DNA of 63,830 nt, filler included, from Parasitella parasitica NRRL 2501 (taxonomy: Eukaryota > Fungi > Mucoromycota): assembly GCA_025201805.1 (NCBI GenBank). It is 14 parts of 14 records of this genome, joined end to end, with 100 filler letters (N's around TTAATTAATTAA, not from the genome) between each part and the next. Parts side by side here need not be neighbours in the genome. Positions count along the whole stretch, not along the records: positions 40,989 to 44,290 come from MU619505.1; 13 more parts are not named here. The stretch is one strand, 5' to 3'. Each line of letters starts with the position of its first letter. Positions within the stretch are counted from its first letter, which is position 1. The position numbers were made by a program, and so were the translations under genes. The notes beneath the pieces are model-generated. The model was not told the origin of the DNA. It made no database searches and was given only the letters and a program-made list of their open reading frames with translations. Below are positions 1,936 to 44,290 of the stretch, piece after piece.

Positions 1936-4124
1936 GAGTCTATGATAGCTGAATATGAAGCCAGCATTAGCAAGTTGGCATACAGAGAAATCCAGAAAGC
2001 TCGTGGCATCAATACCTCTTTAGCCTATTGCAATAAGCTGGTAGAATTTCTTTTGTTCTATGAAAAAGTCTACGCTGTTCATTCACTCGTCTTTCGTTTC
2101 CAAGTTAGGTGGAAAGCTGCTTGCGTTTCTTTTGGAATCGGTAAATATGAGGGATATGTCTATACACGCAGCTTATGATATTTTGTGCTGTTTAAAGGTG
2201 GTAGAACGTACACTTCGTAAAGCTAGAAAAACCTATATCTACGAATCAAACAAAGAATCAGCAGCGAATACGGAGACCTTCGAAAATGCGATTTCTTCAA
2301 CAAACAAAAAGCTTTCCCACAGCACTTGCAATGTATAGATCCTTGCAATCGTCGACATAGAACTATCAACGACATTTGGACAGCAATACCAATGAATCTC
2401 CCAGAACGAAAACAGTTTCTCAGATTCTTAAGTGGGTTCGACAAAGACAATCAAAGGAAAATAAAGACAATTATGTGGACCGCGCAGCTAACTCTCTATC
2501 GAACGGTTACTCGACCAACATAAAGGTTGCGTTGATAGCTCCATGCATGATGTACAATAGTCCTCAGCAAAACTACAAGTTTGGATTTAGAAATGCAATT
2601 TCATTTCTGCTGCGACATTTCTTGCTGCTTCGCGGAGAATCCGCAAAGAACCTGCAGTTCTCGGATCTACAATATATGGAGCTTCACAAAGTAGAAGCTG
2701 TGGGTACATACCCTTCTATTGTCTTTATCTTCAATCAGGGCAAGCGCAACAAGGATGGCAAGACCGAGTCTGGCGCTTGTATGCGGAATAAAATGGTCGA
2801 TATCTGTCCTTTCGTGGCCCTCAGTTTCCACTTTTTCTGGAGATGGAATCACGAAAAAGAAGAATTTCCAAACATGGATAGCAACAAAGACTGGTTCAAC
2901 ATGAAGGTAATCCATGGCGCAAGGCTCTAGTCAGCAACTGTAAAAGGTAACGTTACAACGCACTGTATAGGTTGAATTCACAATTATCAACATTGATTTT
3001 TTGCAGGTGACATTGATGCTGCTGACGATGTTGAATATGACTCTTCTAGCGACGAACGCAACTACCAAGAAAAATGTAGCCACTGGAAAACACCAATCTC
3101 AAGTGCCACTCAAACTAGGTTCATGAGAGAGGCTTTTAACCGTGCTGGTGTCTTTACCGCAGGAAAGGTTACGCACGCTCCTCGTATTTGTGCCACGCAA
3201 ATGGCTGATCTCTTTGGTATTCCTGCCGCGCAAACCCAGAGAATGGGCAAGTGGGGCACTGATGTCATGAAAAAGTCATATCTAATCACAATTCCCTCGC
3301 CAGTTCATGAGAGCCATTGCCGGGTTTGACAACGATGCCGCCTATCATATACCAAGGGCTATTGAGGAGCCTTGCCAAGGGCTGAAGGACTTGGTTTTTC
3401 CGATGGCTGACTACTGGTCTGAGCGGGTCTCCACCGATTCAGTCAAACAAAGCTCTGGCTCGGCAGTAAAATTCTAATGCTTATAAAATGCTTCAAGACA
3501 ACCTTTATGCAAAATGCGGCTGCTATGATGAACCTGATACCCGACCATTCAATCTGGAGGCACGAGATCTTTAAGACGCAACTATTTGCTGATTTCAAAA
3601 AGTAAGTTTTCATGAAAGTTGCTTTCCGAGATCCTGCATCTAAAATGCTCACTCTTCTTACAGAAAAGTGGATGCTCATTTAGATGCTGATAAAGAGCCA
3701 GACTCTCTGAACATCAGTGGGGTTGCCCTCGAGATTCTGCAGCAGCTTGAACAAATTAAAAGGCTAATCAATGCTGGAATGACCGAAAATAGTGAGAAGC
3801 AAAAAGCTGCACAAAATGAAGCCCAGATATTCCAGCAACGCATTCTGGATATTGTCAGTGGCAACAACGTACCAATCCCCAGCCCATGTTTACCATCTTG
3901 TGCTATTATCCCAACTGCAACTCTGCCAGACCATCTTCAGTACACTGCTGGCGGTATTCCTATTTACACAATGGCTTGTGAAATATCCACAGTCAAAGAC
4001 CTGTGGAAGGAATGGATATTGGGCAGTTAAAGAGTTGGAGAGGAAATGCAGCAGCAGTTATAGAGTAAAAGATACGAAATGGTTCAACATTCGAAAAAAC
4101 ATAATTGATGCAGTATTGTACTAA
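1936..4124 (+). pseudogene. Degenerate Crypton tyrosine recombinase (Ndc10 domain II-like plus C-terminal GCR1_C)
   Basis: Fragments carry LLRGES (Arg), GKRNKDG, CPF..L..HFF.RW, THAPR (HxxR), GKWG, SYL (Tyr) and YTM..EI.TVKDLWKEW (GCR1_C). Multiple frameshifts and stops; introns present. Confidence 0.8.
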
Positions 4125-4501
4125 ATTCACTAAACAAAAAAATAAAAAAGCATATGGAAACAACGTAAGATACGCAATTGTTAGTTAAACATCCCTATAG
4201 ACTACACATTTTATCGGAATGAGTTTATTGTACAGTAAATTGCTGCTCGAATGAAGCAATGGAAAGCAGTTGATACTAGCTATTGCATTGAGTGTCTCAA
4301 AATGATGAATATAATGTATTTTATTATCTGATTTATCTGATATGTGAGATCCACTGAAGATTATATGTCTGATTGCATGCCTAATATATCATAATATACT
4401 GTATTTCAGAAATGATCTCAAGGTTATCTTTGGTGGGCTATTCACTTCAATTTTGTTTTTACAGTTAAAAAAAAAATACAATCTTTATTAATATAAAGCA
4501 A

Positions 4502-7500
4502 CAGTATCATAACTAAAAAAATATTTATTTCCTCCAATTAAAATTGAGAAATCATCCAAAATAGTTTTCATATAAGGATTGTACCACTTAATGATACTGA
4601 AATCCACTTAACAATACTGAAAATCTACTGGTATTAGAAATTAAAAAAAGACAAACAAAGTTAATAATACTGAAATCCGGAAAATGAACCAATGTGATAG
4701 CTCTTACTTTTCAGTATTATTAAATCAAAAAAAGTATAAATGCTGGGCAGTCTGTAAGCTATCTACAAGTTACTTTTAACTTCTTATTTATCTTTCAATC
4801 TTAATAACTATGCAACCAATTTTACCAGCTACTCAACGGAAGATGCGTCTTATTAAGCGTGATTCTCCTGAATCTAGCTCGGATTCAGAACAAGTGCCTG
4901 AATCTACCTTTTTGCCAATTGAGAAGGTGGTTCGCACCGAAGAAAGTGGATCTTCGGTTCAAAAAGCTCGCCGTGGTCGTCCTAAGAAGGCTCGTGTCGA
5001 AATGGTCCCTTTGGAATCCTCTCAAAGTGAAGCCACTAGTGCTGCTCCTTCTGCCATTATTCCTACTAAAACAGGTGCTTCCCAGCAAGTTGATGAAGTT
5101 GTTCTTGCACTTCAAGACATTTTGAAGAACAAGCGGCCAAGTACCGAATTGGCTTATCGAATGCCTTTGGCTGTTTGGAAGGTATTGACATAATGAGTTT
5201 TGTTGGTGTACTTTTTCAAAAATAACCACTAAATTTTATATATGAATTAGGAATACTGCCAAAGCTTGGACCTTGGTAGATTTAGCGAAGATAATTTGCA
5301 TCCTTACACTGTTGGTCCGCCCGCTAAAGTAGCAGCCTTTTTTAACGAATGCGTATTCAAGAAAACGTACACAAAACATGTAACAATCGGTGCAGACGTC
5401 AGAACGCAAGTGTCATTGCAAAATGATGGAGATTCTGGACCATCAACCAGATTGATTGACTGTAAGGATTGCATTAAAATATACTATTGCATTTTCTTTT
5501 AACATTCAAACTATAGTGACAGAAGATGCCCCAACAAATAAATCTGGAAGAGCAAAAAAACTTCAAGTACCTATTGGCATTGAGGCTGTAAACCAGTACA
5601 AGAAGGCTTTGATGTCTTTGCATGAATATCAAGTAGCTACCAGAGGAATAACATGGCCATCTCCAAAAATATGCAAAGAGGTGAAAAACACAATCAAACA
5701 GTATGGCGCAAACTTGATCTACGACCAAGTACAGACAAATGCCGATAGAGCTGCTCATTGTATCATCCGGGATTCATATAAAATCGGCCAATTTATTAAA
5801 ATCCTACTAGACTTGTGGTGCTCAACTGACAAGCTTCATTTGCGAGAAAGGTTTTCAATTTCTGCTCGCCACCACATGCTTCTTCGAGATCAAGACTTAC
5901 GAAATTTGAATTTCTCGGATTGTTTTTCGGCTATTATTTCGCGCACGCAACATAGAGGTGTACAGCAAGCTGTTGCTCTCCTTTTTTGCTTGGATAAGGG
6001 TAAAAATCTGAAGGATGGTGAAGTAAAATTTGCGTGCGTGATGAGACATTACAATCTCTACAGATGTCCTTTCAGTGACTTTGCGTTTTATATGTTCAGC
6101 AAACTTCAGGTAACTATAAAGAAAAAGATTTCATAAATAGATTATTGAACTTTTACTTGTATTTGTCTTGTCTCAGAAGGAAGAGCCTGCGTTCCTGGAC
6201 GACACAAGATGGCATAATTTTAAAGTACTTGTAGACAAAGAAGAGGGTATAAGTAGTGTCCAGCAGTACAATGCAACAAAGAAAATCTTTTTAAAGCATG
6301 GAATTCATACAAGTAGAGTTACGCATGGTGGCCGTCATGCCGGAGCTATGGAAGCTGAATCCCTTGGTATCCCCACTGATATCATCAAAAAAGGCGGTGG
6401 ATGGAAGGATCGCTTGGGTCGCCTGGAGACTCATTACCTTGGCAAGCTGCCATCTGAGTTTGCTCGTGGTATGGCTGGTTTTTGGAATAAGCCATTCGTA
6501 CTTGAAAGAAATAGAGTGGATCCTCCCACTGAACTGCAGCAAGAAGTCTTCCCTTGGATTGAGGGTTGCTTTGGGGAGAATAATACCGATTGGAAGAAAG
6601 AATGTCTGGACGAAATGAACCAGATAGATGAAAATGAGTTTTACGAGGAAGATGTTGAGGCTGAATTTGTTGAAGACGATGTAAGTCAGTCGACTTTGAG
6701 GAAAGGAAAGAAAAGGCAAAAGCAAGCAGTGGTCGTACACAAGACCATAGATGCCGCAAAAAGAGGGTTTTTGAAATTGTTGATCAGGTGTAGAAGGATC
6801 ATTTTGCAAGACGCAGCTGCCTATCTCATTTTTAAAAAAGAAAACCACATTGTCAACACTCTCCCTTCATCGAACAACTTCTTTCTCTTGCCCCAGTTTA
6901 AAATATTCCAAGAACAAGTCAGACGTTCGATCAATACTCCTACCAATGATGACCGACTTCAAGATTACGAGAGCCTCGTCCCTCACATCGTAGACTCTCC
7001 AAATGAAGTATCCAGCCGGATCGCTGGTTTTGACCAGCAACTTACTCAAATTCAAAAAAACATCCAGCGAGATCTTAGGCAAGAAATACTTGAACTCAAA
7101 CAGCAATCACTTCTGAATCAGCAAAACGCCTCAAGGCAGATCAGTCAATTGCAACAGCACTTGCAACAATCCTTGGGTATGCAGCAGCTGATTCTGACCA
7201 ATTTACAATTTTTAACAAATCAGCGAATTGAGTCGATTGTTTCTACCTCTCCTACCGCTGCCACCTCAAATTCATCTTCTTTTGCTTCTTTCTCTGCTCC
7301 TGTTCCTGATCTTCCTTCTTCATCCGTTCCATCCAGTTCCGTTCCATCCAGTTCTACTTCCACTTCTTTCACGTCGATTGCATCTTCTTCGCGTGCACTA
7401 CTTCCAACTCCTGCCCAGCCAGAAAACACTGTTTCTGATAACAGTAGCTCGTCTACAAGAACGAGAAGAAAATACAAAAAAAAAGAGAAGGCAACAAAAT

Positions 7501-7988
7501 GGGTTAATTACAATTTATAGAATAAACAAAAAATATTATATATATACTATGAACGAGTAAAATCTCTAATAATTGTTGAGTCTAGCAAATATGCTTATAT
7601 AATGCTTCATAAAATGTTGAACTTCCTTAAGAAATACATCACTAATGAAAGCTCATGTCAGTTAATTTAATAATGATCATACTTTTACAATAACTTAACG
7701 TAATGGCAATCAAACATTAGTATGATTTGACTTAATAAAAAAACCCCATCCGTTATTATTTGCTATAAATTTAAAAATTAGCTTACAGGCGCAGATTGTT
7801 CAAAATTCAACAAAAAGTGCCTCTCGGTATTGAGATTTTGGTATTTTTGCAATTTTTTCCAAAAAAGTAAAAAAGAATGAACATCACCATTTAGAGTAAT
7901 TTTTTTGGCTTCTGGCCCAATAGAAATCTGATTTTTTTGATTGGCTGATTATTTTAATTTTTCTGTGGTTATTATACCGTTACAGTAT
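4502..7988 (+). mobile_element. Crypton DNA transposon, apparently full length
   Basis: Left end fixed by where homology with the second copy begins (CAGTATCATAAC at 4502 vs 49293). Right end inferred from the (A)CAGTAT direct repeat and inverted arm at 7968-7988. Confidence 0.65.
4810..7520 (+). CDS. Crypton tyrosine recombinase (Ndc10-II-like), 4 exons: 4810-5181, 5251-5461, 5517-6109, 6177-7520
   Basis: GT-AG introns join an open frame. AT-hook RRGRPKK. Catalytic set LLRDQD (R), KGK (K), THGGRH (HxxR), GGW (W), THYL (Y). C-terminal coiled coil and Ser-rich tail. Confidence 0.88.
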
Positions 7989-9277: not shown

Positions 9278-9355
9278 CACCATGGCTAACTTGTGTGATA
9301 AAATCCTAACTACTGGTGATGCTTTAGCAACTAGGTGTCCAAAATAAGCACCAGT
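9278..9355 (+). mobile_element. Terminal inverted repeat of a CMC/EnSpm (CACTA-like) element (CACCATGGCTAAC...)
   Basis: Near-exact reverse complement of the ends at ~61210-61288 and ~61645-61723. Lies upstream (across a gap) of a Tnp2-type transposase. Confidence 0.65.
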
Positions 9356-9613
9356 NNNNNNNNNNNNNNNNNNNNNNNNNNNNNNNNNNNNNNNNNNNNT
9401 TAATTAATTAANNNNNNNNNNNNNNNNNNNNNNNNNNNNNNNNNNNNNNNNNNNNATAGAGTCATGTGCATACCTTCTTTTTACAAAAATTATGATATCA
9501 TAGCGATCAATGCAAAACAGTTGATCATTGTGGAGGATGTGAATATAAAAGGCCTCCACAACTTTTGTTAATACGAGCCATCTTCTCTTTTCAGTATACT
9601 AGTAAAAGCAAAA

Positions 9614-11220
9614 ATGTCCTTCCCCTCCCGTAAACGAACAAGATTCTCCAATGCCACTCTGAAGCAAGTTCGAGATCTTTTGGTGGAAAAATTGGATCCC
9701 AATTCATCAGTTCCTGCTCCAGTTACTCGTGAATCCTTATATTCCAATGAAACTGGCCATTACGTGTCTGGTGAACAGTCTTCTTCCAATGGTGATACTC
9801 AAGACAACAAAAATCCACTCTCTTTTTCTGGTCTATCTGATAATAGTAGTGATGTCGATGAAGGCAATGAGTACGAGGATGGTGAAGATGACGATGATGG
9901 CGAGGGTTATTCTGCAGCAGGGATATTTCTTCAAGATGAAGGTAGGTTTAGACATTGCAAGAGTGGATTGAATAAACAACTTACGGAAGTCATTGCGTAT
10001 GCATAAATACATCTGTAACAACAGATAATAGTGATGACGAGGCTGTGATGGATGATGTTGGAGGCGATCAAACCGACGACGATACTATTGAATATAAAAT
10101 TCAAATACCTGATCATCCATTCACGCCGGTTGAGACTTACAGCTTGATGTTGGAGGATGTCTGCAATACTTTCAACATTCCACGAGAAGGAGCACAAACG
10201 CTCAGGCATTTGATAAACAAAATTATAAACGATAATGACTTAGGTATGTTGTCTCTATAAATAATTTGAGGAGGGGTTTTAGTGAAATGGCTGCTGTGAG
10301 ATGACAAATTTTTCATACCTTGTTTTTTTTGTCCATGTAGACCGTTCAAGCCAGCTTTTAAGCCGTGAAGCTTGCAGTAACTTGCTCAAAAAGGTGATCC
10401 CCATAAAGATGACAAAGCCATTTCAAGTTTGCAGTAACGGGTGCTATTTGTACAACAACGATGGCACTTCTTCCTGCCCTGTTTGCCACAATTCTACCAA
10501 GAAAATGACAAAAATGGTTTCTATCACAGAGAAAGATGTTGAGATGCTATCATGCGACGATATTCGACAGAATTTGATACAAATGCAAATAGACCGCTTT
10601 GCTTGCAACAATGACAATACTGATTCCTCTTATGGTGATATATATGATGGTGCACTTTTTAAAACGTTATACAGCTCAAAAATGATAAATAACGATCCCG
10701 ATATCCTGAACATATATTTGAAGCTGGATATTGATGGTTTCACTTGTTCTGCTTCCCGATCGAGTATGGTGATGATTCATGCCGTAGTTCTGAACCTGGA
10801 TAGTGCTGAAAGGTACTGAGATATCATTGCAACCGCTATATTATACCTGTGTATTAATTTCAGTTTCACCTTTTTGTGCAAAAATTAGATATGCAAGACA
10901 TGCCACCTTCCAAGTCGCTATCTTACCAGGAAAGTCGAAATCAGATTTTGAATCTTTTTTGAGTCCAATTGTCGAAGAGATAATTTTGCTTAGCAAAAAG
11001 ACTCTGGTTGTTCAAGCCGGCAAAGCTCCACCTGTTCGTTGCAAAGTCTACGCACTTTTTATAAATGGCGATGGAGTTGAGATCAACAGACTGCTGCGAT
11101 ACTCAGGTCACACTCAGTAAGTGAATATCTGATGGAATGGCATTGTTGAATTAATGTGTTTTGGATACTGTATAATAGTAAATACGGTTGCCGTTTCTGC
11201 GTGACCCCTGGATCTCATAG
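9614..11220 (+). CDS. CACTA/EnSpm (Tnp2 / Transposase_21-like) transposase, spliced, truncated by gap, probably degenerate
   Basis: C.NGC.LY...CPVC, YGDIYDG, IDGF, FLSPIVEE, NGDG...H and YGCRFC motifs across ORFs 9614, 10045, 10301 and 10803. Confidence 0.75.
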
Positions 11221-11335
11221 ANNNNNNNNNNNNNNNNNNNNNNNNNNNNNNNNNNNNNNNNNNNNTTAATTAATTAANNNNNNNNNNNNNNNNNNNNNNN
11301 NNNNNNNNNNNNNNNNNNNNNAAATTGCATTATAG

Positions 11336-11695
11336 GCCTTTAAGCGGGGGAAACGTGGTATTTATGATTAAGAGGCATTTATTTAACCAAGTCATGAAGC
11401 TACATAAAAATAGCTTTTGAAGTCGCATTTCACGGCATCTTGGCTATTGATTCATATCAAGAGATAACCGTATTGCTTAAGGAGTTCATGTTTTGCTCCT
11501 CAATTGAAATAGGTGCTTCCCTGCTAAAGGCTTGTATTTGCAGTGGTGAATTCAAGCTCAGAAGCATGTTGCCATTGCAACTTGCACACATCCTAAATTT
11601 TCATGGCTTATTTTTCAAAAAATTACCTGTTATTTAGGATATGTTTACAAAGTGTTTTTGCAAGCAGCCTTTGAATTTTGAATCGAACCATATAC
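11336..11695 (+). repeat. Dispersed repeat family D (GCCTTTAAGCGGGGGAAA...CTCCTCAATTGAAATAGG...)
   Basis: Similar copies at ~17471-17727, ~55601-55870 and ~18570-18720 (minus). Confidence 0.6.
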
Positions 11696-12477
11696 GTAAT
11701 GATGGTGGTAGATGTTATATCAACAACTTCATCTCATAGGTCTTTCTTCTATAATTTCATTGAGCAATATTATATCATCCTAATGTATATTTTAGATATT
11801 TAAATGCAATAAAAGACTTGTAATAATTCACAGCTTTCAACTGTATTCGAGCAATAAAAGATTTATATCATTTGTTAAGAAGATATAATAAATAGAGGAG
11901 GGTATCTATATCTTCAATTATTTACTACGAGTGAGATGGTAACTGTAATAAAAAATTTACAGTAGATAAATGTGATAGTATGTTGTCAGTTTCGATGAAC
12001 GAATAGAGAACAAACCGTGTCAGCCATGGCAATTGCTTTGATATGTTTCATTTTTGAGATTGATCGAAAAATATGAGCTGATATAATATATATCAAATAG
12101 TTTGTTTGCACCTTGACATTTGAATAAGTCCGCATATCTTGTTAATGTCATGGCAGCCGAGATATTACGATGTCTAGTGACAGTTGAAATAATATACTAA
12201 TATTATGTATTTGATACAATCATATATATAATATATTTGCATTAAACCTGGAAGCGTAGTGCTTGGGTAAAGTTGTAGCAGTGCGTATACAGCACATCAT
12301 TTTTTTTGTATCATTGAAACCAGCATTTCGAGATGAAAAAAAAATAAGGTTTTGCCTTTTTATCCGTATATGGCGTCTATTTTTGTTTACCATTTTGATC
12401 TGCCATAATTATAGACTGGAGAATAAAGTCCCTGTTTCAAATCAAGAGGTTATTCCTGTAAGTAACACAGATCTGAG

Positions 12478-12935
12478 TGTTGTATCCATATAAAGGCTAC
12501 ATATGTCATATCTAACTTAGTCATAATGCACGGATCATGATATTAATTGTTGGTAATTCTTTTACAAATAAGGAATAAACTACAAGTTGTAATTCGACCT
12601 CTTGCAAGGTTCCAGGCTTATTCAAAGAATACATCTAGATCAGATCGCGGGATGTCGGGAAGACATCCTACCCAATTTTCTCTTTAATGTAAAATAGAAA
12701 GATAGGTCTGTCCTGGAAATGCTGTGATTTAATAAGGTTTGACACTTCTTGTCAAACATCAAATGTTATGTGGATAAACATTGATTGGGATATATTTTAG
12801 TATAAATAGAGATCATATCTTATGTCAATAAAAGTCTTCAGTTTTGTATCTGGTTTTATTCAGAAAAGTCTTATTACTTTATACAAATCATATTTTACAT
12901 AACATTACGCTGCGCCCTTTGACACTGGCACAACA
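12478..12935 (+). repeat. Solo LTR family A (TGTTG...CAACA, 458 bp) with 5-bp TSD CTGAG
   Basis: CTGAG at 12473-12477 and 12936-12940; terminal inverted TGTTG/CAACA. Confidence 0.9.
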
Positions 12936-13098
12936 CTGAGCACCAGGATAAAGGTTAAGGCACTGTCAGATCAAAGACGTGTAGCCCTTGTTGTATAATT
13001 TTACATCGTACCCTGTCAAGTAAATTGTCACTATGAATTAGTCTTGTCAATTAGTAATCTAAATAAGTCACCATAAATTCATGTAGCTTTAAAAAGTA

Positions 13099-14619
13099 CG
13101 AGAGCTGTCTCCAACCCCCGAACTAAGGTGAAAAAAATTCGACCTTCGCTTTGCTACGGTAATTTTTGTTCCAATGGGGGTGCTCAGCTCACGCCTGCAG
13201 CGGGCTATCTCATTTAATACAAAGCTAGGTAAACAAAATAAACGAAATTCCATTCTACATGCGAAGTAAGTGTTACAGATTCTTTTTTTTTTAATACGAT
13301 TGTTGAAAAACTTCTCGGAAGACAACATTGTTGGTGAATTTGCCAACTTGCTCTTCTATTTCTGAGATTTCGGAAGGAATCATCAACTTCAATGATCCGG
13401 GTTTTCGAACACGGGACAAAGCTACATATAATTGACCATGATGACCGAAAATATGGCACGGCAAATACAAACCTATAGAGCTGATTTTTGGCCTTGTGCC
13501 TTGTTAATGGTCATGCCAAATGCTAATCTTATGGGAAATTTAACCCTTTGAAAGTCAACTGGGCATAACCCTTCAGTGGCCAAGATGATAAATTTGATTC
13601 TCGGAATCAGAGCTATATTATTTTTGTTTGGGCCAGTAGCAATGGTAGCTTTAATAACATTTGTTTTCAGCGATTTGACAATCAATCTTGTGCCATTGCA
13701 AATGCCAGGGGCAGGGCCAATATTTCGAATAACCATTATTGGGGAGCCAATTTTCAGATTGAGTTGATGGGGTGTCACCGAACCATTCTCTATGGTATTC
13801 TAATTCAAAATCTCCACTGGCATCTCCATCTGACATTCTTCATCTGAAGTGCGATCATGGCTAACATAGGATATTGTATGACCTGGAAGACATTGTAAGA
13901 GGAGATTGTTGATGATTTTGACATCTTTGTTCTTCGCAGTTAAGATAGCTCTTTCAACAAAATACTCAGGAAGCTGTAGTCTCCAAATTTGTAGGGTCCA
14001 CAATGGCGACATATGACAGGAGTCGTATACGTTGAGTTGGTAGCATTATTGAGGTAAGCATCCAAATTATTAGGGTTCCTACCACAATTCCAATGAGTGG
14101 ATCCGAAATGTCTTTCTCTACCACACAAAGGGCATGTGACAATCAATGGGGTATTTATTGAGTTCATCATGGCACACTCTCTGTGAGTGATTTGGCTATG
14201 GCCCTGTCTTCCACAAAATAAACAGACAATGACTAATCAACAGTGAAATTATATATATTTATTAAATACTCGCTATTCTATGGTATAAACGTACTCTATT
14301 CAGCTAGGTTGTTCCCGCTACTTGAGTTCTTCTTCTTTGACCTTCTCCTCCGCAAGATGAACGTCTAACAGCTACTACTCGATCTGATAATTAATTTTAG
14401 AAGCTCATAATAAGTATGATGTATCCTACTCTCTTCTACTGTTGTATTCGAACTGAGCATATCAAGATTTCTTAAAAGATCAGAAGTATATTTTCGGCCC
14501 TGAATGTTTATCCCGTAACTCGATAACTTTTAATTTAAGCAGTGATTTTTGCTTTTTAAACCCTGGGACTGTGAACTAACTTGCTAAAACTACCTAATCA
14601 TTTTACATAAGTCATACAG
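13099..14619 (-). mobile_element. Helitron remnant (PIF1-family helicase C-terminus plus N-terminal Zn knuckle)
   Basis: ERAILTAKNKDV..IN, PHQLNLKIGSPIM.IRN..GICNGTRL, IPRI, FPIRLAFGMTINKAQGQ. CPLCG..H....H.NC knuckle in ORF 13940-14170. Internally deleted. Confidence 0.8.
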
Positions 14620-14759
14620 TATAAACAGCAGATGCAATCTTGATCTTAAATAAAGTATCTTTAAGTGTTCGTATCTCGTTAACATTTTGTTTTTATTATC
14701 TTTTTTGATCCAACAGTTCTGTATTCCCTGAATATTTTGTGCCTGGATCATAATTTTGT

Positions 14760-16357
14760 TCTGGAGACACCATGTCCATACTTCTGTAGCCAGTTCCAGT
14801 AGAGGAAGAGAGCGGGTTCCACCATGCTTGCTGATGTAGGAGAGGCTGGTCGTGTTTTCAGTCCTGATGAAAACTGTGGAGTTCGGTGGAAGAGGAAAAG
14901 TCTTGAGAGCTAGTCGAGCTGCTTTGAGCTACCTCCAATTGATCGATTGAGTCGCTTCCTTTGATGTCCAGTATACCCGTGAGCCCGATGATGGTTCCAT
15001 GAGCGACCCCAATCCGTTTTGCTGGCGTCCACAAACATTGTTTGATTCGGAGTTGGAGGGAGTATCGAACGGCCATTCCACTTGCAAACGTTGCCGTACC
15101 ACTATTGCAGTTCCTTCAAACTCGCTTGATCAAGAGATCCAGGACGATTCCAATCCGGATCTGATTTCACTATTTGATTCTTATAATACAAAAGGTGGCG
15201 AATGTACAAGCGAGCTGGGAAGATTGCAAATTCTGCTGGTTGTATCCGCATTGTCAAGCTGTGTATGATCCGGGGTTTGTTCATTACCTGTTTGATCGAA
15301 CGCCGAATATCACTCAGTTTATTTGCCGGAAGTAGGGCTGTCATGGACTGGGTATTCAGTGCAAAGCCTAGATGTTCGAATTGTTGAGTGGGAGCGAGAA
15401 CTGATTTATTGAAGTTAATAATCCAGCCAAGGGCGGTTGTCCAGTACTAGTGCACCTGATTCCGCCATTTCAGGCGTAAGAAACATCGTGACTCTGGGTA
15501 GAAACCTATTTGTAGAAAGGCATCGGAAAGGTCAATGGACACTAGGTAATCGTTCGGTTTTATTATGAGTGACACTTCCCTGATGGTTTCCATTTTGAAT
15601 GGGAAGCTTCCAAGTATTGATTGAGGTTCTTGAGGTTGTCTACTGGACGGACGCCGCCATTCTTCTTCCGAAGAATGACAATAATTGAGCTGTAGAAGTC
15701 TGGCGTTTGCCGTACCAGCTGAGGAATCACCTTTTCGATTGCTGATTTGGCCAAGAGATCTTGTATAGCTTCATCGATAAGGGTAGCTTGTTCGACTGAG
15801 AATGGAGCGATTGATGCTGGTGTTGTATGAAAGGGAATGCGATAACTGTGTTGAACTGTGTTGATAACGAACGAATTGTTGATGATATCGGTCGATTGAT
15901 GAAAATGCTTGCTGAGTCAACCGCCTACTGGGTCGGCTGTTGTTGCTGTTGGTGTAGGTGTTGTGATTACTAACGAAAGGGATTGTCTTTCCTCCACCTG
16001 TTGTTGTTACTTTTGCTGCTGCGATTGCTGAAGGTGTTATTGTTGTTGTTGTTGAAACCACCCTGCTGCGAGGGTGGACCTGGCCAAAAAAACTGCTGAT
16101 CCGTAAAAGTCGAGAAAGGACCCAAGACTGAGAGTCCAAGACTGAGAGTTGCCATTGTTAGCATGGCGACGTTGACGTTTATTAATAGTCGCCTCACGAG
16201 TAGCCTTGCGCGCAGCCGTTTTCTGAAGCAATGCTTTCCGAAATTCAACAAGAGAAAGAGTGTATTTAATCTCATTACCTGATTTCAATGTAAAAGAAGG
16301 ATCGATAGCACGAAGAGCAATGTTGTCACGAGAATGCGTGATAGAGGCTCTTACATC
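14760..16357 (-). mobile_element. Degenerate DIRS-type retrotransposon (gag-like plus RT/RNase H fragments)
   Basis: AIEKV...FYSS.....KKNGG.RPV.NLK.LNQYL and SIDLSDAF RT motifs; upstream gag-like frame ending in an Asn-rich tract; overlapping frames; many indels. Confidence 0.7.
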
Positions 16358-40988: not shown

Positions 40989-42474
40989 CGTGGGCTCTGT
41001 ATCAATAGTTTGCTTTTCGCTGATGATGTTGCCGTCTTTGGGTCTAAAGCTGATGTCCAAGCGATGCTGAATCTGGCTGAAGAACATTCCCTGTCCCTTG
41101 GTTATCGATGGAACCCCAGCAAATGTGCTGTGATCTGTGCTCCTTCGACGTCGACTCGTAATCCTCTTAGGATATATGGTGAGCCTCTTGCGGTCGTTGA
41201 AGAATTCACGTACCTTGGTATGCCTTTTCGTTACAAGGGTCTATATGCTCCTGGGATCCTTACTCTGCGCGCCGCTGGTGCTATTAAGACAATGGCATTG
41301 TTGAACTCGATTGGCGTAAATCGTAATGGTTTTTCGTTGCTGCTCTGTTCTCGTCTGTACAAAAGCTTTATTCGTCCAAAACTGGAATTTGGATTAGCTA
41401 TATCACATTTTTCGTTCCGTGACTTTAAAGCTTTGGATGATCTGCAAAACCGGCTGGTGGGTATGTTTGTTGGTGGTACATGGTACAATGTTGCAAAACA
41501 TATAACCTGTATCCCAAGCATGAAGCATCGCTACAATGTTCTGGCTACTCGCTTTGCTCTGCGTGCTGATACGCTTCCTGAGGACTGCTTACTGGTGCTA
41601 ATTCGAAACAGCATGCTATACAACAGGCTAGACAAATTTATTTGTCGAAACCCAATGTATATAGCCCTCCCTGATCCTCTGCCATCTTCATCTGGTCTTA
41701 CTAATTTCTTTAGTGACTACTGGCAAGATCAGGTTGATCGTCAACTTGCTTCTGCTGCTGTTTCTGGCTCTCAGGTTCTCCTTCGTGCTTGTCGCTCGTC
41801 TGCCTCTCGCCCAGATCCCGTTCTCTACCTGCCCATTGGTCGATCTGCTCGAAGTCGTCTTGTTCGTTGGCGTCTTGGCCGGTTCACAAACCGTAGAGAA
41901 GAGTGTCCCTGTGCCACAGGCGCTTTTATCTCTCGCGATCACTTTTTGACTTGTCGTGCCCTGGATCCCACTATGTTGGATGCTTTGCCCTCTGCTCCTC
42001 CTAGTAGTGTCAACCGGATTGACCATGCTCTCAATTGCCTTCCCACAAAGGCATCTGATGGTCCTCCGAGGTTCTGGTCTGCTTTGCTTGCTCTCCTACA
42101 TGCCATTGATTGCCTCGTGCATCCTTTGGCTACCATTGCACCAGATCCTGATCCAGGATTTTCGTGGTTCACAGCTAGATTGTCTGTCCAATGATGAAAG
42201 TTTGTTGTGTTTGTCTTCTTTGTGCGGTGCCTCGGTGGTAAGTCATATCAAAGTTCCCAGCCGTTGGCCATCCCTCAAGATCAAACCAATATCCCGGTAT
42301 TCATGCCGCTCATTTGCTACTACCACACTTTCTTTTTTCCCCTTTTTATCTTTCGTTAGTGCACTGATAAGGGTTTTTGTAACTGTTTCTTTTTATTTTC
42401 TGGAATTCTAGGCTTATGCTCATATCGAGTGCCCATTGAATTCATGTAATATATTAATAAAAACAACCATTAAA
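40989..42474 (+). mobile_element. Non-LTR retrotransposon (LINE) 3' half: RT C-terminus, CCHC finger, 3' UTR
   Basis: LLFADDV, WNPSKC, FTYLG, FIRPKLEFG, CPC...H..C. ORF open to 42194. UTR ends AATAAAAACAACCATTAAA. Confidence 0.92.
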
Positions 42475-42712
42475 CTGAGCTACATCCCCATCTCTTTCGT
42501 TTTTTCATCACTTTTTTCCTCACTTTTCGGTTAAAAGTTTTACTCTCCTACAAAAAACGAATTTTCTCAACAGTCAGCAACGCAATCAACTCGAAATTAT
42601 ACCAGTATACTTGCCTTTAGTGATAGTCTATTGTGTTATAATTTCAGTATCGTCGAACACCTGCCTCATATTTTTTTTAGATTTTAAAAATTTATAAAAA
42701 ATATACACCGCC

Positions 42713-43666
42713 ATGGACAATCCACTACAGCATTTGGACATGAATCAGTTTCCTTTGGTACTGCAACAACTTCAACAACAACTTACTTTAGTCACAGAGA
42801 AAGTTAATCAACATGATGAGCTGCTCACACGTTTATCTGTTCTTGAGCAAGAAAATAAGGAACTGAAAAAATTTTTACACGACAAGGAGCTTATAATTGA
42901 AAAACTCCAGGCTCAAATTCCAAGTCACGAAAATTCTTCCGCTTCGGGTCGAACCGAGGGGGGGAATAATCTCAACACTCAAGGCTCTCCCAAGCCTAAC
43001 AATACTGTACCAAACTATAGTACAGTTGCTTCTGCTGCTGCTCACAAGCCAGATCCCCTTGCTACTGCAAACAAGAAGGGTAAAAAGCGCCTGGCTGCTG
43101 GTCGTGTCTTTCGAACTCCTGCTACCAAAGGTCCTCAAGGCTATGAATATGTTTATATTGGTAGATCTCGTAAGATCCAACGTTCTGAAGTTAGAAAAAT
43201 TCTCAGAGACTCTGGTGTTGACTTGGGTCGTGTCTTGGATATCTGTTTTCCTGCATCTGAGGTTATCGGCATTCTGTTACACACCCAGTATGTACAAGAT
43301 TTTACTGAACTCATGAAGGCTGCTGACGCCGAGCTTGTCTCCGGTTTTGACCCACTGGATCCTGCCAATATTGCTGACCCCAAGTATGCCACTCTTGGTG
43401 TATCTGAGCGTTCTAGTCTGATTTTGGAATTTACTGCTACTCGCTGTCTTCAAACACTGGCTTTCCTGCGACCATTGAATGTTAGTGGTGTTGGTAAGTA
43501 CTTCGTCGAGCAAGGCTGGATCTGTGAAGAAGACCTTTCTGTCTCTGTTGCGGCAGCTGTCAAGCGCTTTGCTGTCAAGGAGCCCAAGCGGGCTAAATTT
43601 CTGTTCCGTCGTCAACTGTCTAGCGACTCTGACTCTGAGGATAATGGCTCTGTTATGGAACAATAA
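42713..43666 (+). CDS. LINE ORF1 protein (N-terminal coiled coil)
   Basis: 317-aa ORF directly upstream of an APE-containing ORF2; heptad-rich N-terminus; YSTVAS motif common in ORF1p. Confidence 0.85.
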   Translation: MDNPLQHLDMNQFPLVLQQLQQQLTLVTEKVNQHDELLTRLSVLEQENKELKKFLHDKELIIEKLQAQIPSHENSSASGRTEGGNNLNTQGSPKPNNTVPNYSTVASAAAHKPDPLATANKKGKKRLAAGRVFRTPATKGPQGYEYVYIGRSRKIQRSEVRKILRDSGVDLGRVLDICFPASEVIGILLHTQYVQDFTELMKAADAELVSGFDPLDPANIADPKYATLGVSERSSLILEFTATRCLQTLAFLRPLNVSGVGKYFVEQGWICEEDLSVSVAAAVKRFAVKEPKRAKFLFRRQLSSDSDSEDNGSVMEQ

Positions 43667-44290
43667 TGTGTTCCATGCCTGCACCTCCGTTACTGTCTAA
43701 TATTTATGTCAACCCAGTCCGCTCCTTGTTTGTCTCTCTTTCCCTCTGGAATGCTAACGGTCTTCGCCAATCAGTAATTCATGATGTTCTCTCTCATGCT
43801 CTTAATACTCATGTGCTACTGGTTACAGAAACCTGGCTTACCTCTGGCTCTTTCCCCACCAGCTGGTCTCAATTTCATCTCTATGGTACAAAAGTTCCTG
43901 GTGCATTTAATCGAGGTTCTGGTGGTATTACTGCTTTTGTCTCTCCTTCCTGTCCTTATAATGTCTCCCAACTCCCGTCATACAACCCGCACACTCTGTC
44001 CCTAAAGGTTGGCACCCTTACGGTCCATTGTGTATACTTACCTCCACCCCTATCATCTGATAAGGTGCTCTCAATCCTCAGTTCTTTGCCTATGGCTCAG
44101 GATACTATTCTGTGTGGTGATTTTAATGCTAGATTGGGCTCTCTAACTGGTGATACTATTGCTAATGCTCGTGGTAATGCTCTAAAGCCTTGGCTTGAAG
44201 AGTATAATTTCTGTGTTCTGAATACGTCTTTGGCTTTTGGTGTTCGAACCTTCTCATCCTTTCGGCGTCAACAGGAACTGAGCAGTATTA
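43666..44290 (+). CDS. LINE ORF2 N-terminus: apurinic-like endonuclease (truncated by gap)
   Basis: LWNANGL, LVTETW, VYLPP, CGDFNAR, NARG..L motifs of the APE/EEP domain. Confidence 0.9.

What the first reader, a model, noticed from the sequence alone, without database searches (positions are those of the whole stretch)
42440..42520. Tandem LINEs joined by the antisense 5' end of a tRNA: candidate tRNA-gene-targeting retrotransposon
Seen: one LINE's 3' UTR ends ...AATAAAAACAACCATTAAA. It is followed by CTGAGCTACATCCCC (42475-42489), then the pyrimidine-rich 5' UTR and ORF1 of the next copy, head to tail. Known: the reverse complement GGGGATGTAGCTCAG is the first 15 nt of many eukaryotic tRNA-Ala genes. 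Sequence-specific APE LINEs (e.g. Tx1 clade on 5S, U2 or tRNA spacers) build tandem arrays separated by one TSD. Inference: this 15-mer is the TSD of an element that inserts at the tRNA 5' boundary, leaves one intact tRNA gene at the array's 5' flank and stacks copies upstream as a safe harbour. I know of no such element described in Mucoromycota. The ACCAT just before the A-run also matches the tRNA D-loop antisense, which could be priming microhomology.
Basis: partly seen in the sequence, partly recalled or inferred. Interest (0 to 1): 0.85.

Follow-up and report, generated by a model that had tools for sequence, protein, structure and literature searches.

The report
tRNA-gene-targeting LINE arrays in Mucorales
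The short spacer between two head-to-tail jumping genes is a duplicated piece of a tRNA gene, showing that this fungal LINE family always inserts at one exact spot inside tRNA genes, rebuilds the gene and stacks copies beside it.

Summary
CTGAGCTACATCCCC lies at 42475-42489, between the 3' UTR of one APE+RT LINE and the 5' UTR, ORF1 and APE domain of the next.

I fetched ten related loci from six Mucoromycotina genomes. They hold 26 such spacers. Each spacer's 14 nt are the antisense of nt 1-14 of a tRNA, and the sequence changes with the array:
- Ala, in two variants
- Lys
- Phe
- Thr
- Ile
- one unidentified tRNA-like 5' end

All six array ends I could see begin with an intact tRNA gene. It has the same orientation in every case, and its nt 1 directly abuts an element's 5' end. 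LINE copies 99.8% identical sit at tRNA-Lys and tRNA-Ala in the window's own genome.

The element therefore nicks the tRNA-sense strand after nt 14, inside box A (TAGCTYA), and nicks the other strand at +1. This makes a 14-bp target site duplication (TSD) that regenerates the gene.

- The TSD is 14 nt, not 15. The leading C is not copied from the local tRNA gene.
- The ACCAT "microhomology" is not conserved.
- Tx1 membership is unproven.

A SINE-like element and an ORF1-only derivative share the site. I found no published description of this in fungi. I rate it a new variant of a known kind.

The parts
40989..42194 (+). C-terminal part of ORF2 of the upstream LINE copy. It runs from RT motif FADD through the C-terminal C-x-C...H...C motif to the stop codon. 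The left edge is cut by the scaffold's N gap.
   Evidence: ORF 41010-42194. It aligns to full-length ORF2s of relatives carrying Pfam RVT_1 and Exo_endo_phos.
42195..42475 (+). 3' UTR of the upstream LINE. AATAAA lies at 42456-42461, followed by 14 nt ending TTAAAC. There is no poly(A) tail. The last base, C42475, is not copied from the local tRNA gene.
   Evidence: the tail block ..ATGCTCATAYCGAGTGCCCA..AATAAAAA..TTAAAC is conserved in M. velutinosus and M. circinelloides copies.
42476..42489 (+). 14-bp target site duplication, the antisense of tRNA-Ala nt 14 to 1 (sense GGGGATGTAGCTCA).
42490..42712 (+). 5' UTR of the downstream LINE copy. The first ~33 nt (ATCTCTTTCG...) are nearly invariant across species. 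A conserved inverted repeat and TATAA block lies at 42593-42645.
42713..43666 (+). ORF1 (317 aa). It has an N-terminal coiled coil, a disordered linker, an alpha/beta domain and a helical domain. It has no zinc knuckle and no Pfam family.
43666..44290 (+). Start of ORF2, the APE endonuclease domain. The N, E, Y and D/N catalytic motifs are present. Its ATG overlaps the ORF1 stop (TAATG). The right edge is cut by the contig end.

Best explanation
The piece is the inside of a tandem array of a tRNA-gene-specific, APE-type non-LTR retrotransposon of Mucoromycotina. Shown: every element (LINE, internally deleted ORF1-only derivative, SINE-like element, 5'-truncated copies) is followed by the antisense of nt 1-14 of a tRNA. 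At the array's 5' end a complete tRNA gene of that same kind, in the opposite orientation, touches an element's 5' end with its nt 1. At the far end the last 14-mer is followed by non-element flank sequence. This is the footprint of target-primed reverse transcription. The first nick is in the tRNA-sense strand between nt 14 and 15, inside box A (TAGCTYA^R). The second nick is in the other strand 14 bp away, at the -1/+1 boundary. The resulting 14-bp TSD restores the whole tRNA gene next to the element's 5' end. Inferred: the restored gene is again a target, so new copies insert between the tRNA and the older copies and build the array. The endonuclease or ORF2p reads the box-A sequence directly, which would explain single-nucleotide precision across at least five isotypes that all share TAGCTYA. 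Transcripts end a few bases into the downstream spacer, since AATAAA lies 14 nt before the element's end. The RNA's terminal UGAGCUA would then pair with the nicked ...TAGCTCA-3' primer, and synthesis would start at the element's last C. That would explain the precise tail-less 3' junction and the constant C at 'nt 15'. Multicopy tRNA genes would thus serve as a harmless landing site.
For: The window junction is. The junction catalogue lists 26 spacers in 10 loci from 6 genomes: the window's assembly, M. velutinosus, M. circinelloides, Helicostylum pulchrum, Rhizopus stolonifer and Umbelopsis isabellina. They comprise 7 different 14-mers, and in all six loci that hold the tRNA the 14-mer equals nt 1-14 of that adjacent intact tRNA: Lys-CTT L001, Phe-GAA L003, Ala-AGC L006 and L008, Thr-TGT L007, Ile-AAT L009 (ARAGORN; Rfam tRNA 62 bits). 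In Umbelopsis the tRNA's box-A variant TAGCTTA is copied into the spacers, so nt 8-14 come from the target. The base before the 14-mer is C in 25 of 26 spacers, although the Ala and Lys genes have A15. LINE copies at tRNA-Lys (L001) and tRNA-Ala (L002) in the window's genome are 99.78% identical over 1801 nt. Element 5' and 3' ends are conserved while the spacer varies. ORF2 has APE and RT domains. A confident APE model (pLDDT 88) matches L1-EN and TRAS1-EN. Logan contigs of four runs break at exactly 42475/76 and 42489/90, with the alternative neighbours predicted by the model: tRNA-Ala body, a second LINE tail, and a second 5' end.
Against: There is no genome-wide census. The 10 loci were reached through ORF1/ORF2 proteins and cover about 170 kb, so copies outside tRNA genes cannot be excluded. 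A distant relative in Circinella (37% identity, L011) has no tRNA nearby. L005 and L006 may be one array assembled twice. Direct DNA recognition by the endonuclease, the read-through/annealing step and the order of insertions are inferred, not shown. Transcription and current activity were not tested. Whether the array-flanked tRNA genes are still expressed is unknown.
Confidence: 0.9

Rival explanations
1. The outcome is the same but the aiming mechanism differs. The element is tethered to the RNA polymerase III pre-initiation complex (TFIIIB/TFIIIC), as for Dictyostelium TRE5-A or yeast Ty3. The fixed position would then reflect the geometry of that complex rather than endonuclease sequence recognition.
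For: Several tRNA isotypes are used, and their first 7 nt differ. The orientation is opposite to the tRNA, as in TRE5. The second nick falls exactly at the mature 5' end whatever the sequence there. NLTR-A of D. purpureum sits 2-6 bp upstream of tRNA coding sequences.
Against: Known tethered elements insert within windows of several bp outside the gene. Here 26 of 26 junctions are at the same nucleotide, inside box A. All seven target sequences share TAGCTYA at nt 8-14.
Confidence: 0.25
2. The 15-mer is a fixed internal part of the element's 5' or 3' end that merely resembles a tRNA, and the real TSDs lie outside it.
For: Within the window alone both spacers of the scaffold are identical.
Against: The 14-mer changes to match the neighbouring tRNA (Lys, Phe, Thr, Ile, Ala variants) while the element ends stay constant. 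This holds even between 99.8% identical copies.
Confidence: 0.01
3. A single insertion next to a tRNA was amplified into an array by unequal crossing-over or segmental duplication. No repeated site-specific insertion occurred.
For: L005 and L006 show alternating, near-identical units, which recombination could expand.
Against: Arrays mix different element types, each bounded by the spacer: LINE, ORF1-only derivative, SINE-like element, a 74-nt tail fragment, and two LINE lineages only 39% identical in ORF2. Their 5' junctions carry different extra bases. Independent arrays occur at 5 or more isotypes and in 6 genomes.
Confidence: 0.03
4. The tRNA piece comes from an RNA primer. A 5' tRNA fragment would prime reverse transcription and be carried into the cDNA.
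For: The tRNA piece is attached to the element's 3' end in the orientation a primer would have.
Against: The piece always matches the tRNA gene physically adjacent to the array. The remainder of that gene (nt 15-73) continues seamlessly on the other side of the array. This is a TSD footprint, which an RNA primer does not explain.
Confidence: 0.02

Closest known systems
Dictyostelium tRNA-gene-targeted non-LTR retrotransposons: TRE5-A (~48 bp upstream) and D. purpureum NLTR-A (2-6 bp upstream of the mature coding sequence)
   Same: They are APE+RT LINEs with two ORFs. They are found upstream of tRNA genes of many isotypes, in the opposite transcriptional orientation, and successive insertions stack at one tRNA gene.
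   Different: Those elements integrate outside the gene, in a window of several bp. TRE5-A is aimed by an ORF1p-TFIIIB contact. Here the first nick is inside the gene at one fixed nucleotide in box A, the TSD is tRNA nt 1-14, and the distance to the mature 5' end is 0 bp. The host is fungal, not amoebozoan.
Sequence-specific APE LINEs of the R1 and Tx1 clades (R1, TRAS/SART, Tx1L, Keno, Mutsu, Dewa in a tRNA-Leu spacer)
   Same: They insert at a fixed nucleotide position in a multicopy target, have precise tail-less 3' junctions and form head-to-tail arrays separated by target sequence. The APE fold resembles TRAS1-EN and L1-EN. From memory, the ORF1/ORF2 UAAUG overlap resembles SART1.
   Different: The target is the conserved box A shared by several tRNA isotypes rather than one repeat unit. 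The TSD regenerates the target gene instead of splitting it. Clade membership was not established here.
tRNA-gene-specific RLE elements of the NeSL group (NeSL-1_TV in tRNA-Pro; LIN15_SM in tRNA-Arg; LIN25_SM in tRNA-Glu)
   Same: They are non-LTR retrotransposons inserted at specific sites in tRNA genes.
   Different: Those encode a restriction-like endonuclease and each uses one isotype. This family has an N-terminal APE and uses at least five isotypes.
Grem-LINE1 of Mucor (pericentric LINE1-like element)
   Same: Same host group, and a two-ORF APE+RT LINE.
   Different: Grem-LINE1 has a zinc-finger ORF1 and a zf-RVT domain and is defined by pericentric location. This family's ORF1 has no Pfam hit and its ORF2 has no zf-RVT hit. 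Its location is defined by tRNA genes.
Ty3 (yeast LTR retrotransposon at Pol III start sites)
   Same: It integrates within a few bp of the tRNA 5' end without destroying the gene.
   Different: Ty3 is an LTR element using an integrase aimed by TFIIIB. It makes a 5-bp TSD outside the coding sequence.

Membership tests
Target-sequence-specific APE-type non-LTR retrotransposon (general kind) | ORF2 with an N-terminal apurinic-like endonuclease and a reverse transcriptase | tested here: met
   Pfam Exo_endo_phos, Exo_endo_phos_2 and RVT_1 hit full-length relatives. The window holds the APE start and the RT end. The APE model matches L1-EN and TRAS1-EN at TM 0.75-0.77.
Target-sequence-specific APE-type non-LTR retrotransposon (general kind) | Independent copies occupy the same nucleotide position of the same kind of target, in one orientation | tested here: met
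   26 of 26 spacers and 6 of 6 proximal array ends fit, across 7 target variants and 6 genomes.
Target-sequence-specific APE-type non-LTR retrotransposon (general kind) | Few or no copies outside the target, genome-wide | tested here: inconclusive
   Only 10 protein-anchored loci were sampled. No whole-genome search tool for fungal assemblies was available. One distant relative (L011) is not at a tRNA.
Target-sequence-specific APE-type non-LTR retrotransposon (general kind) | The endonuclease nicks the target sequence specifically in vitro | not testable with these tools
   This needs recombinant protein.
Tx1 clade (L1 group) | RT phylogeny places the element inside Tx1/L1 | tested here: inconclusive
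   The family profile aligns colinearly to human L1 ORF2p (E 3e-48) and better than to R2, but no R1, I, Jockey or Tad RT is in the PDB for comparison. The isolated TRAS1 EN is detected by sequence (5e-6) while the isolated L1 EN is not. The nearest non-fungal relatives often carry RNase H. No labelled reference set was available.
Tx1 clade (L1 group) | L1/Tx1-type ORF1 (RRM with CCHC knuckle, or Transposase_22) and a zf-RVT-like C-terminus | tested here: not met
   ORF1 has no Pfam family and no zinc knuckle. Its model has no PDB match at E<=0.001. ORF2 has no zf-RVT hit, although it has a conserved C-x-C..H..C motif.
TRE5/NLTR-type Pol III-complex-directed LINEs | Integration upstream of tRNA genes of many isotypes, in opposite orientation | tested here: met
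   compared.
TRE5/NLTR-type Pol III-complex-directed LINEs | The insertion point lies outside the coding sequence within a distance window set by TFIIIB/TFIIIC | tested here: not met
   The first nick is inside the gene after nt 14, the position is invariant, and the element sits 0 bp from the mature 5' end.
TRE5/NLTR-type Pol III-complex-directed LINEs | ORF1p-TFIIIB interaction, and dependence on box B | not testable with these tools
   This needs genetics or biochemistry.
Grem-LINE1 | Zinc-finger ORF1 (PF00098/PF16588) and zf-RVT (PF13966) in ORF2 | tested here: not met
NeSL-group tRNA-specific elements | A restriction-like endonuclease C-terminal to the RT | tested here: not met
   The endonuclease is an N-terminal APE.

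The most novel reading that the evidence does not exclude
An ancient LINE lineage, older than the Mucorales-Umbelopsidales split, has an endonuclease that reads the Pol III box A itself. It cuts after nt 14 and again exactly at +1, so the tRNA gene is rebuilt with the element's conserved 5' end as its new upstream region. Element and tRNA gene would then form a divergent unit. The nearly invariant first ~33 nt of the element could serve both as LINE promoter or start and as tRNA upstream context. The lineage supports its own SINE and ORF1-only parasites at the same site. It would be the first fungal, box-A-reading, gene-regenerating tRNA-targeted LINE, and a natural safe-harbour insertion system.
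Probability: 0.35. Interest if true: 0.75.

Novelty: new variant of a known kind. Interest (0 to 1): 0.66.

Why it matters
Retrotransposons that aim at tRNA genes are textbook examples of "safe-haven" integration, but the known non-LTR cases are amoebozoan (TRE5, TRE3, NLTR) or single-isotype RLE elements.

This fungal family adds a third solution. It cuts inside the gene at a conserved promoter box, and the geometry restores the gene. Several points then become testable:
- how an APE endonuclease acquires sequence specificity for box A;
- whether Pol III factors help;
- what replacing the upstream region does to tRNA expression.

The work would be done in Mucorales, where genetic tools exist. 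The family also explains assembly breaks and repeat arrays next to tRNA genes in Mucorales genomes. It is of practical interest as a natural site-specific insertion system.

Tried and rejected
1. The exact-protein look-up of the 317-aa ORF1 found nothing. The 308-aa form, P0001, worked.
3. An Rfam scan of the piece found only a chance sub-threshold miRNA hit and no tRNA. ARAGORN found no tRNA in the piece.
Of 120 loci, none carried the element. These loci (L012 onward, one from a gut metagenome) were not used further.
5. Clade assignment remained unresolved. Sequence search of the APE domain against the PDB was uninformative. The protein atlas gave only generic RVT/APE clusters. The profile search and the fold search did not separate L1 from R1-like affinities.
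6. The ORF1 model (pLDDT 77) has no PDB match at E<=0.001, so an L1-ORF1p-like fold could not be shown.
7. I first took L002:1-713 for the ORF1-only element. It is instead the ORF2 C-terminus of a second LINE lineage.
8. The Circinella locus L011, a 37%-identity relative, shows no tRNA or spacer and was uninformative.
9. The ACCAT microhomology idea is rejected, because sister tails lack it.

Full report
**What is in the window**

The piece (40989-44290) equals positions 4221-7522 of a 7.5-kb scaffold, MU619505.1 of assembly GCA_025201805.1 (locus L002). It starts just after a 2125-N gap. Its parts are, in order:

- the C-terminal 394 codons of a LINE ORF2, from the FADD motif to the stop at 42192-42194;
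- a 3' UTR with AATAAA at 42456-42461, ending TTAAAC at 42475, with no poly(A) tail;
- TGAGCTACATCCCC at 42476-42489;
- a pyrimidine-rich 5' UTR;
- ORF1 at 42713-43666 (317 aa);
- the start of ORF2 at 43666, overlapping the ORF1 stop as TAATG.

ORF2 here carries the N, E, Y and D/N motifs of an APE endonuclease. The 15-mer occurs twice in the scaffold (714 and 5707) against 0.00 expected.

**Is it a tRNA piece?**

No tRNA lies in the piece. I laid Logan contigs of four runs of the same organism on it. Contigs break exactly at 42475/76 and 42489/90, and three alternative neighbours appear:

- before 42476, CGAGCGCTCTACCATT, the antisense D-arm of a tRNA-Ala, so the organism has a tRNA gene beginning with this 14-mer;
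- before 42475, ATTTTCGC, another element tail;
- after 42490, CCTTTCTTT, another element 5' end.

**Other copies**

ORF1 has 77 relatives, all in Mucoromycotina. ORF2 relatives reach Rhizopus, Cokeromyces, Dichotomocladium, Circinella and Umbelopsis. Identity then drops to 29% or less outside the group. I fetched ten informative loci.

| Locus | Genome | Proximal end | Spacers |
|---|---|---|---|
| L001 | window's genome | intact tRNA-Lys(CTT), minus strand | one, with the Lys 14-mer |
| L002 | window's genome | not in locus | two, Ala 14-mer |
| L003 | M. velutinosus | intact tRNA-Phe(GAA) | four, identical Phe 14-mers |
| L004 | M. circinelloides | not in locus | one, Ala 14-mer |
| L005 | M. 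velutinosus | not in locus | five, Ala 14-mer |
| L006 | M. velutinosus | intact tRNA-Ala(AGC) | four |
| L007 | M. circinelloides | intact tRNA-Thr(TGT) | one, Thr 14-mer |
| L008 | Helicostylum pulchrum | intact tRNA-Ala variant | two |
| L009 | Umbelopsis isabellina | intact tRNA-Ile(AAT) | two |
| L010 | Rhizopus stolonifer | not in locus | four, tRNA-like GGTCGCTTAGCTCA |

Details of individual arrays:

- **L001:** the tRNA-Lys is followed by a 74-nt element tail, then the spacer, then GG and a full-length LINE.
- **L003:** the tRNA-Phe directly abuts a SINE-like element. A second SINE-like element, a LINE and a 3.4-kb element follow. All are separated by the Phe spacer, and the last spacer is followed by non-element flank sequence.
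- **L006, L007:** the tRNA directly abuts a LINE 5' end.
- **L008:** both spacers are followed by non-element flank sequence; the one at 3577 lies upstream of this tRNA and probably closes a separate array.
- **L009:** the spacers copy the tRNA's own box-A variant, TAGCTTA.

In total there are 26 spacers and 7 different 14-mers. All six array ends in view begin with an intact tRNA in the same relative orientation. All six tRNA genes that ARAGORN found in loci L001-L011 are of this kind. The spacer is therefore target sequence, not part of the element.

The element ends stay constant while the spacer changes. In the window's own genome the LINE at tRNA-Lys and the LINE at tRNA-Ala are 99.78% identical over 1801 nt. 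One active subfamily therefore uses several isotypes.

**Anatomy of the insertion**

In tRNA orientation each array reads: upstream flank, then repeated units of [nt 1-14 + antisense element], then the complete tRNA. The element's 3' end is joined to the strand ending ...TAGCTCA-3'. The priming nick is therefore in the tRNA-sense strand after nt 14, inside box A. The second nick is 14 bp away, at the -1/+1 boundary. The 14-bp TSD restores the gene.

The base next to the 14-mer is C in 25 of 26 spacers, whereas the intact Ala and Lys genes have A15. This base is therefore not copied from the local tRNA gene, and the TSD is 14 bp, not 15. All targets share T8-A-G-C-T-Y-A14. Their first seven bases differ and follow the local gene. 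The Umbelopsis case shows that nt 8-14 are also target-derived.

Extra C or G bases (0-3) at some 5' junctions are the usual untidy LINE 5' joins. They also argue for independent events.

**Mechanism: inferred parts**

- The regenerated gene can be hit again, which builds arrays with the newest copy next to the tRNA.
- Single-base precision inside a conserved promoter box favours direct recognition by the endonuclease or ORF2p. Tethering to TFIIIB/TFIIIC, as in TRE5-A or Ty3, remains a live rival at about 0.25.
- AATAAA lies 14 nt before the element's end, and the next element's U-rich 5' end follows the spacer. Transcripts may therefore end within the spacer. Their terminal UGAGCUA could pair with the nicked primer so that synthesis starts at the final C. 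From memory, this is like the read-through templates described for R1. It would explain the tail-less, exact 3' junction.

**Proteins**

- **ORF2 (about 1120 aa):** it has APE and RT domains and a conserved C-x-C..H..C motif near the C-terminus, with no RNase H or zf-RVT hit. The APE model is confident (pLDDT 88) and matches L1-EN and TRAS1-EN about equally, with R1Bm-EN slightly lower.
- **ORF2 family profile:** it aligns colinearly with human L1 ORF2p (3e-48). By sequence it detects TRAS1-EN but not the isolated L1-EN.
- **ORF1:** it is a coiled coil followed by an alpha/beta domain and a helical domain. It has no Pfam family and no PDB match.

The family is not Grem-LINE1, which has a zinc-finger ORF1 and zf-RVT.

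**Companions at the same site**

- A ~420-nt element with a tRNA-like head (Rfam tRNA 22 bits, box A TGGCTCA, box B) shares its tail with a LINE-like element in the same array.
- A 1.96-kb element has an ORF that is a 30%-identical ORF1 homologue. It carries the tail ..AAATTTTCGCC.
- That tail belongs to a second LINE lineage, whose ORF2 end is L002:1-713.

**What is known**

Reviews and primary papers list these tRNA-associated non-LTR elements: TRE5, TRE3, NLTR-A and NLTR-B of dictyostelids, Dewa (a tRNA-Leu spacer), and the RLE elements NeSL-1_TV, LIN15_SM and LIN25_SM. For Mucorales I found only a note that Ty3-like LTR elements co-localise with tRNA genes in Rhizopus, and Grem-LINE1. Five targeted full-text searches found no description of a tRNA-targeting LINE in fungi. 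Repbase entries could not be checked.

**Verdict**

This is a real, well-supported, site-specific LINE family. I rate it a new variant of a known kind. It differs from known cases by its fungal host, by cutting at box A, by using several isotypes and by regenerating the gene.

Noticed in passing
L003:8905-9326 and 9342-9764 (M. velutinosus): A ~420-nt SINE-like element with a tRNA-like head (box A TGGCTCA, box B GGTTCGAATCC; Rfam tRNA 22 bits, below threshold). Its 3' tail matches the LINE-like element at L003:14608-17989. It is inserted at the same tRNA-Phe site. Its own box A differs from the TAGCTYA target at one base.
   Followed up: partly
L005:4555-6518, 11329-13290, 13307-15269; L006 likewise: A 1.96-kb non-autonomous element whose 390-aa ORF is a distant ORF1 homologue (30% identity, E 6e-27). 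It carries the 5' end ACCTTTCTTTCC and the tail ..AAATTTTCGCC, and alternates with full LINEs in tRNA-Ala arrays. It looks like an ORF1-only ('half-LINE') derivative.
   Followed up: partly
L002:1-713 (same scaffold as the window piece): The end of a second LINE lineage. Its ORF2 C-terminus is only 39% identical to the window's, and its tail is ..AAATTTTCGCC. It is followed by the same tRNA-Ala spacer, so two diverged lineages share one array.
   Followed up: partly
window 43662-43668: The ORF1 stop and the ORF2 start overlap as TAATG. The same one-base overlap is kept in M. velutinosus and M. circinelloides copies. This suggests termination-reinitiation, as I recall for SART1.
   Followed up: no
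window 42593-42645: A conserved 5'-UTR block with an inverted repeat (GAAATTATACCAGTATA / TATTGTGTTATAATTTC) containing TATAA. It is kept across species whose ORF1s are only ~50-65% identical. It may be a promoter element or an RNA hairpin.
   Followed up: no
window 42490-42522: The first ~33 nt of the element are nearly invariant in all LINE copies from three species. In every proximal copy they become the immediate upstream region of the regenerated tRNA gene.
   Followed up: no
window 40989-44290 versus Logan contigs: 8 of the 14-15 single-base differences per run between the window copy and the collapsed contigs are C>T. This may be copy or strain variation, or a mutation bias on repeats.
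   Followed up: no
L002:2096-4220: A 2125-N scaffold gap lies immediately left of the piece. The apparent 4993-bp spacing of the two spacers is therefore an estimate, not sequence.
   Followed up: yes
L005 (end of a 2.35-Mb contig) and L006 (start of a 483-kb contig), M. velutinosus: Long tRNA-Ala arrays sit at contig ends. These arrays probably cause assembly breaks, and the two loci may be one array.
   Followed up: no
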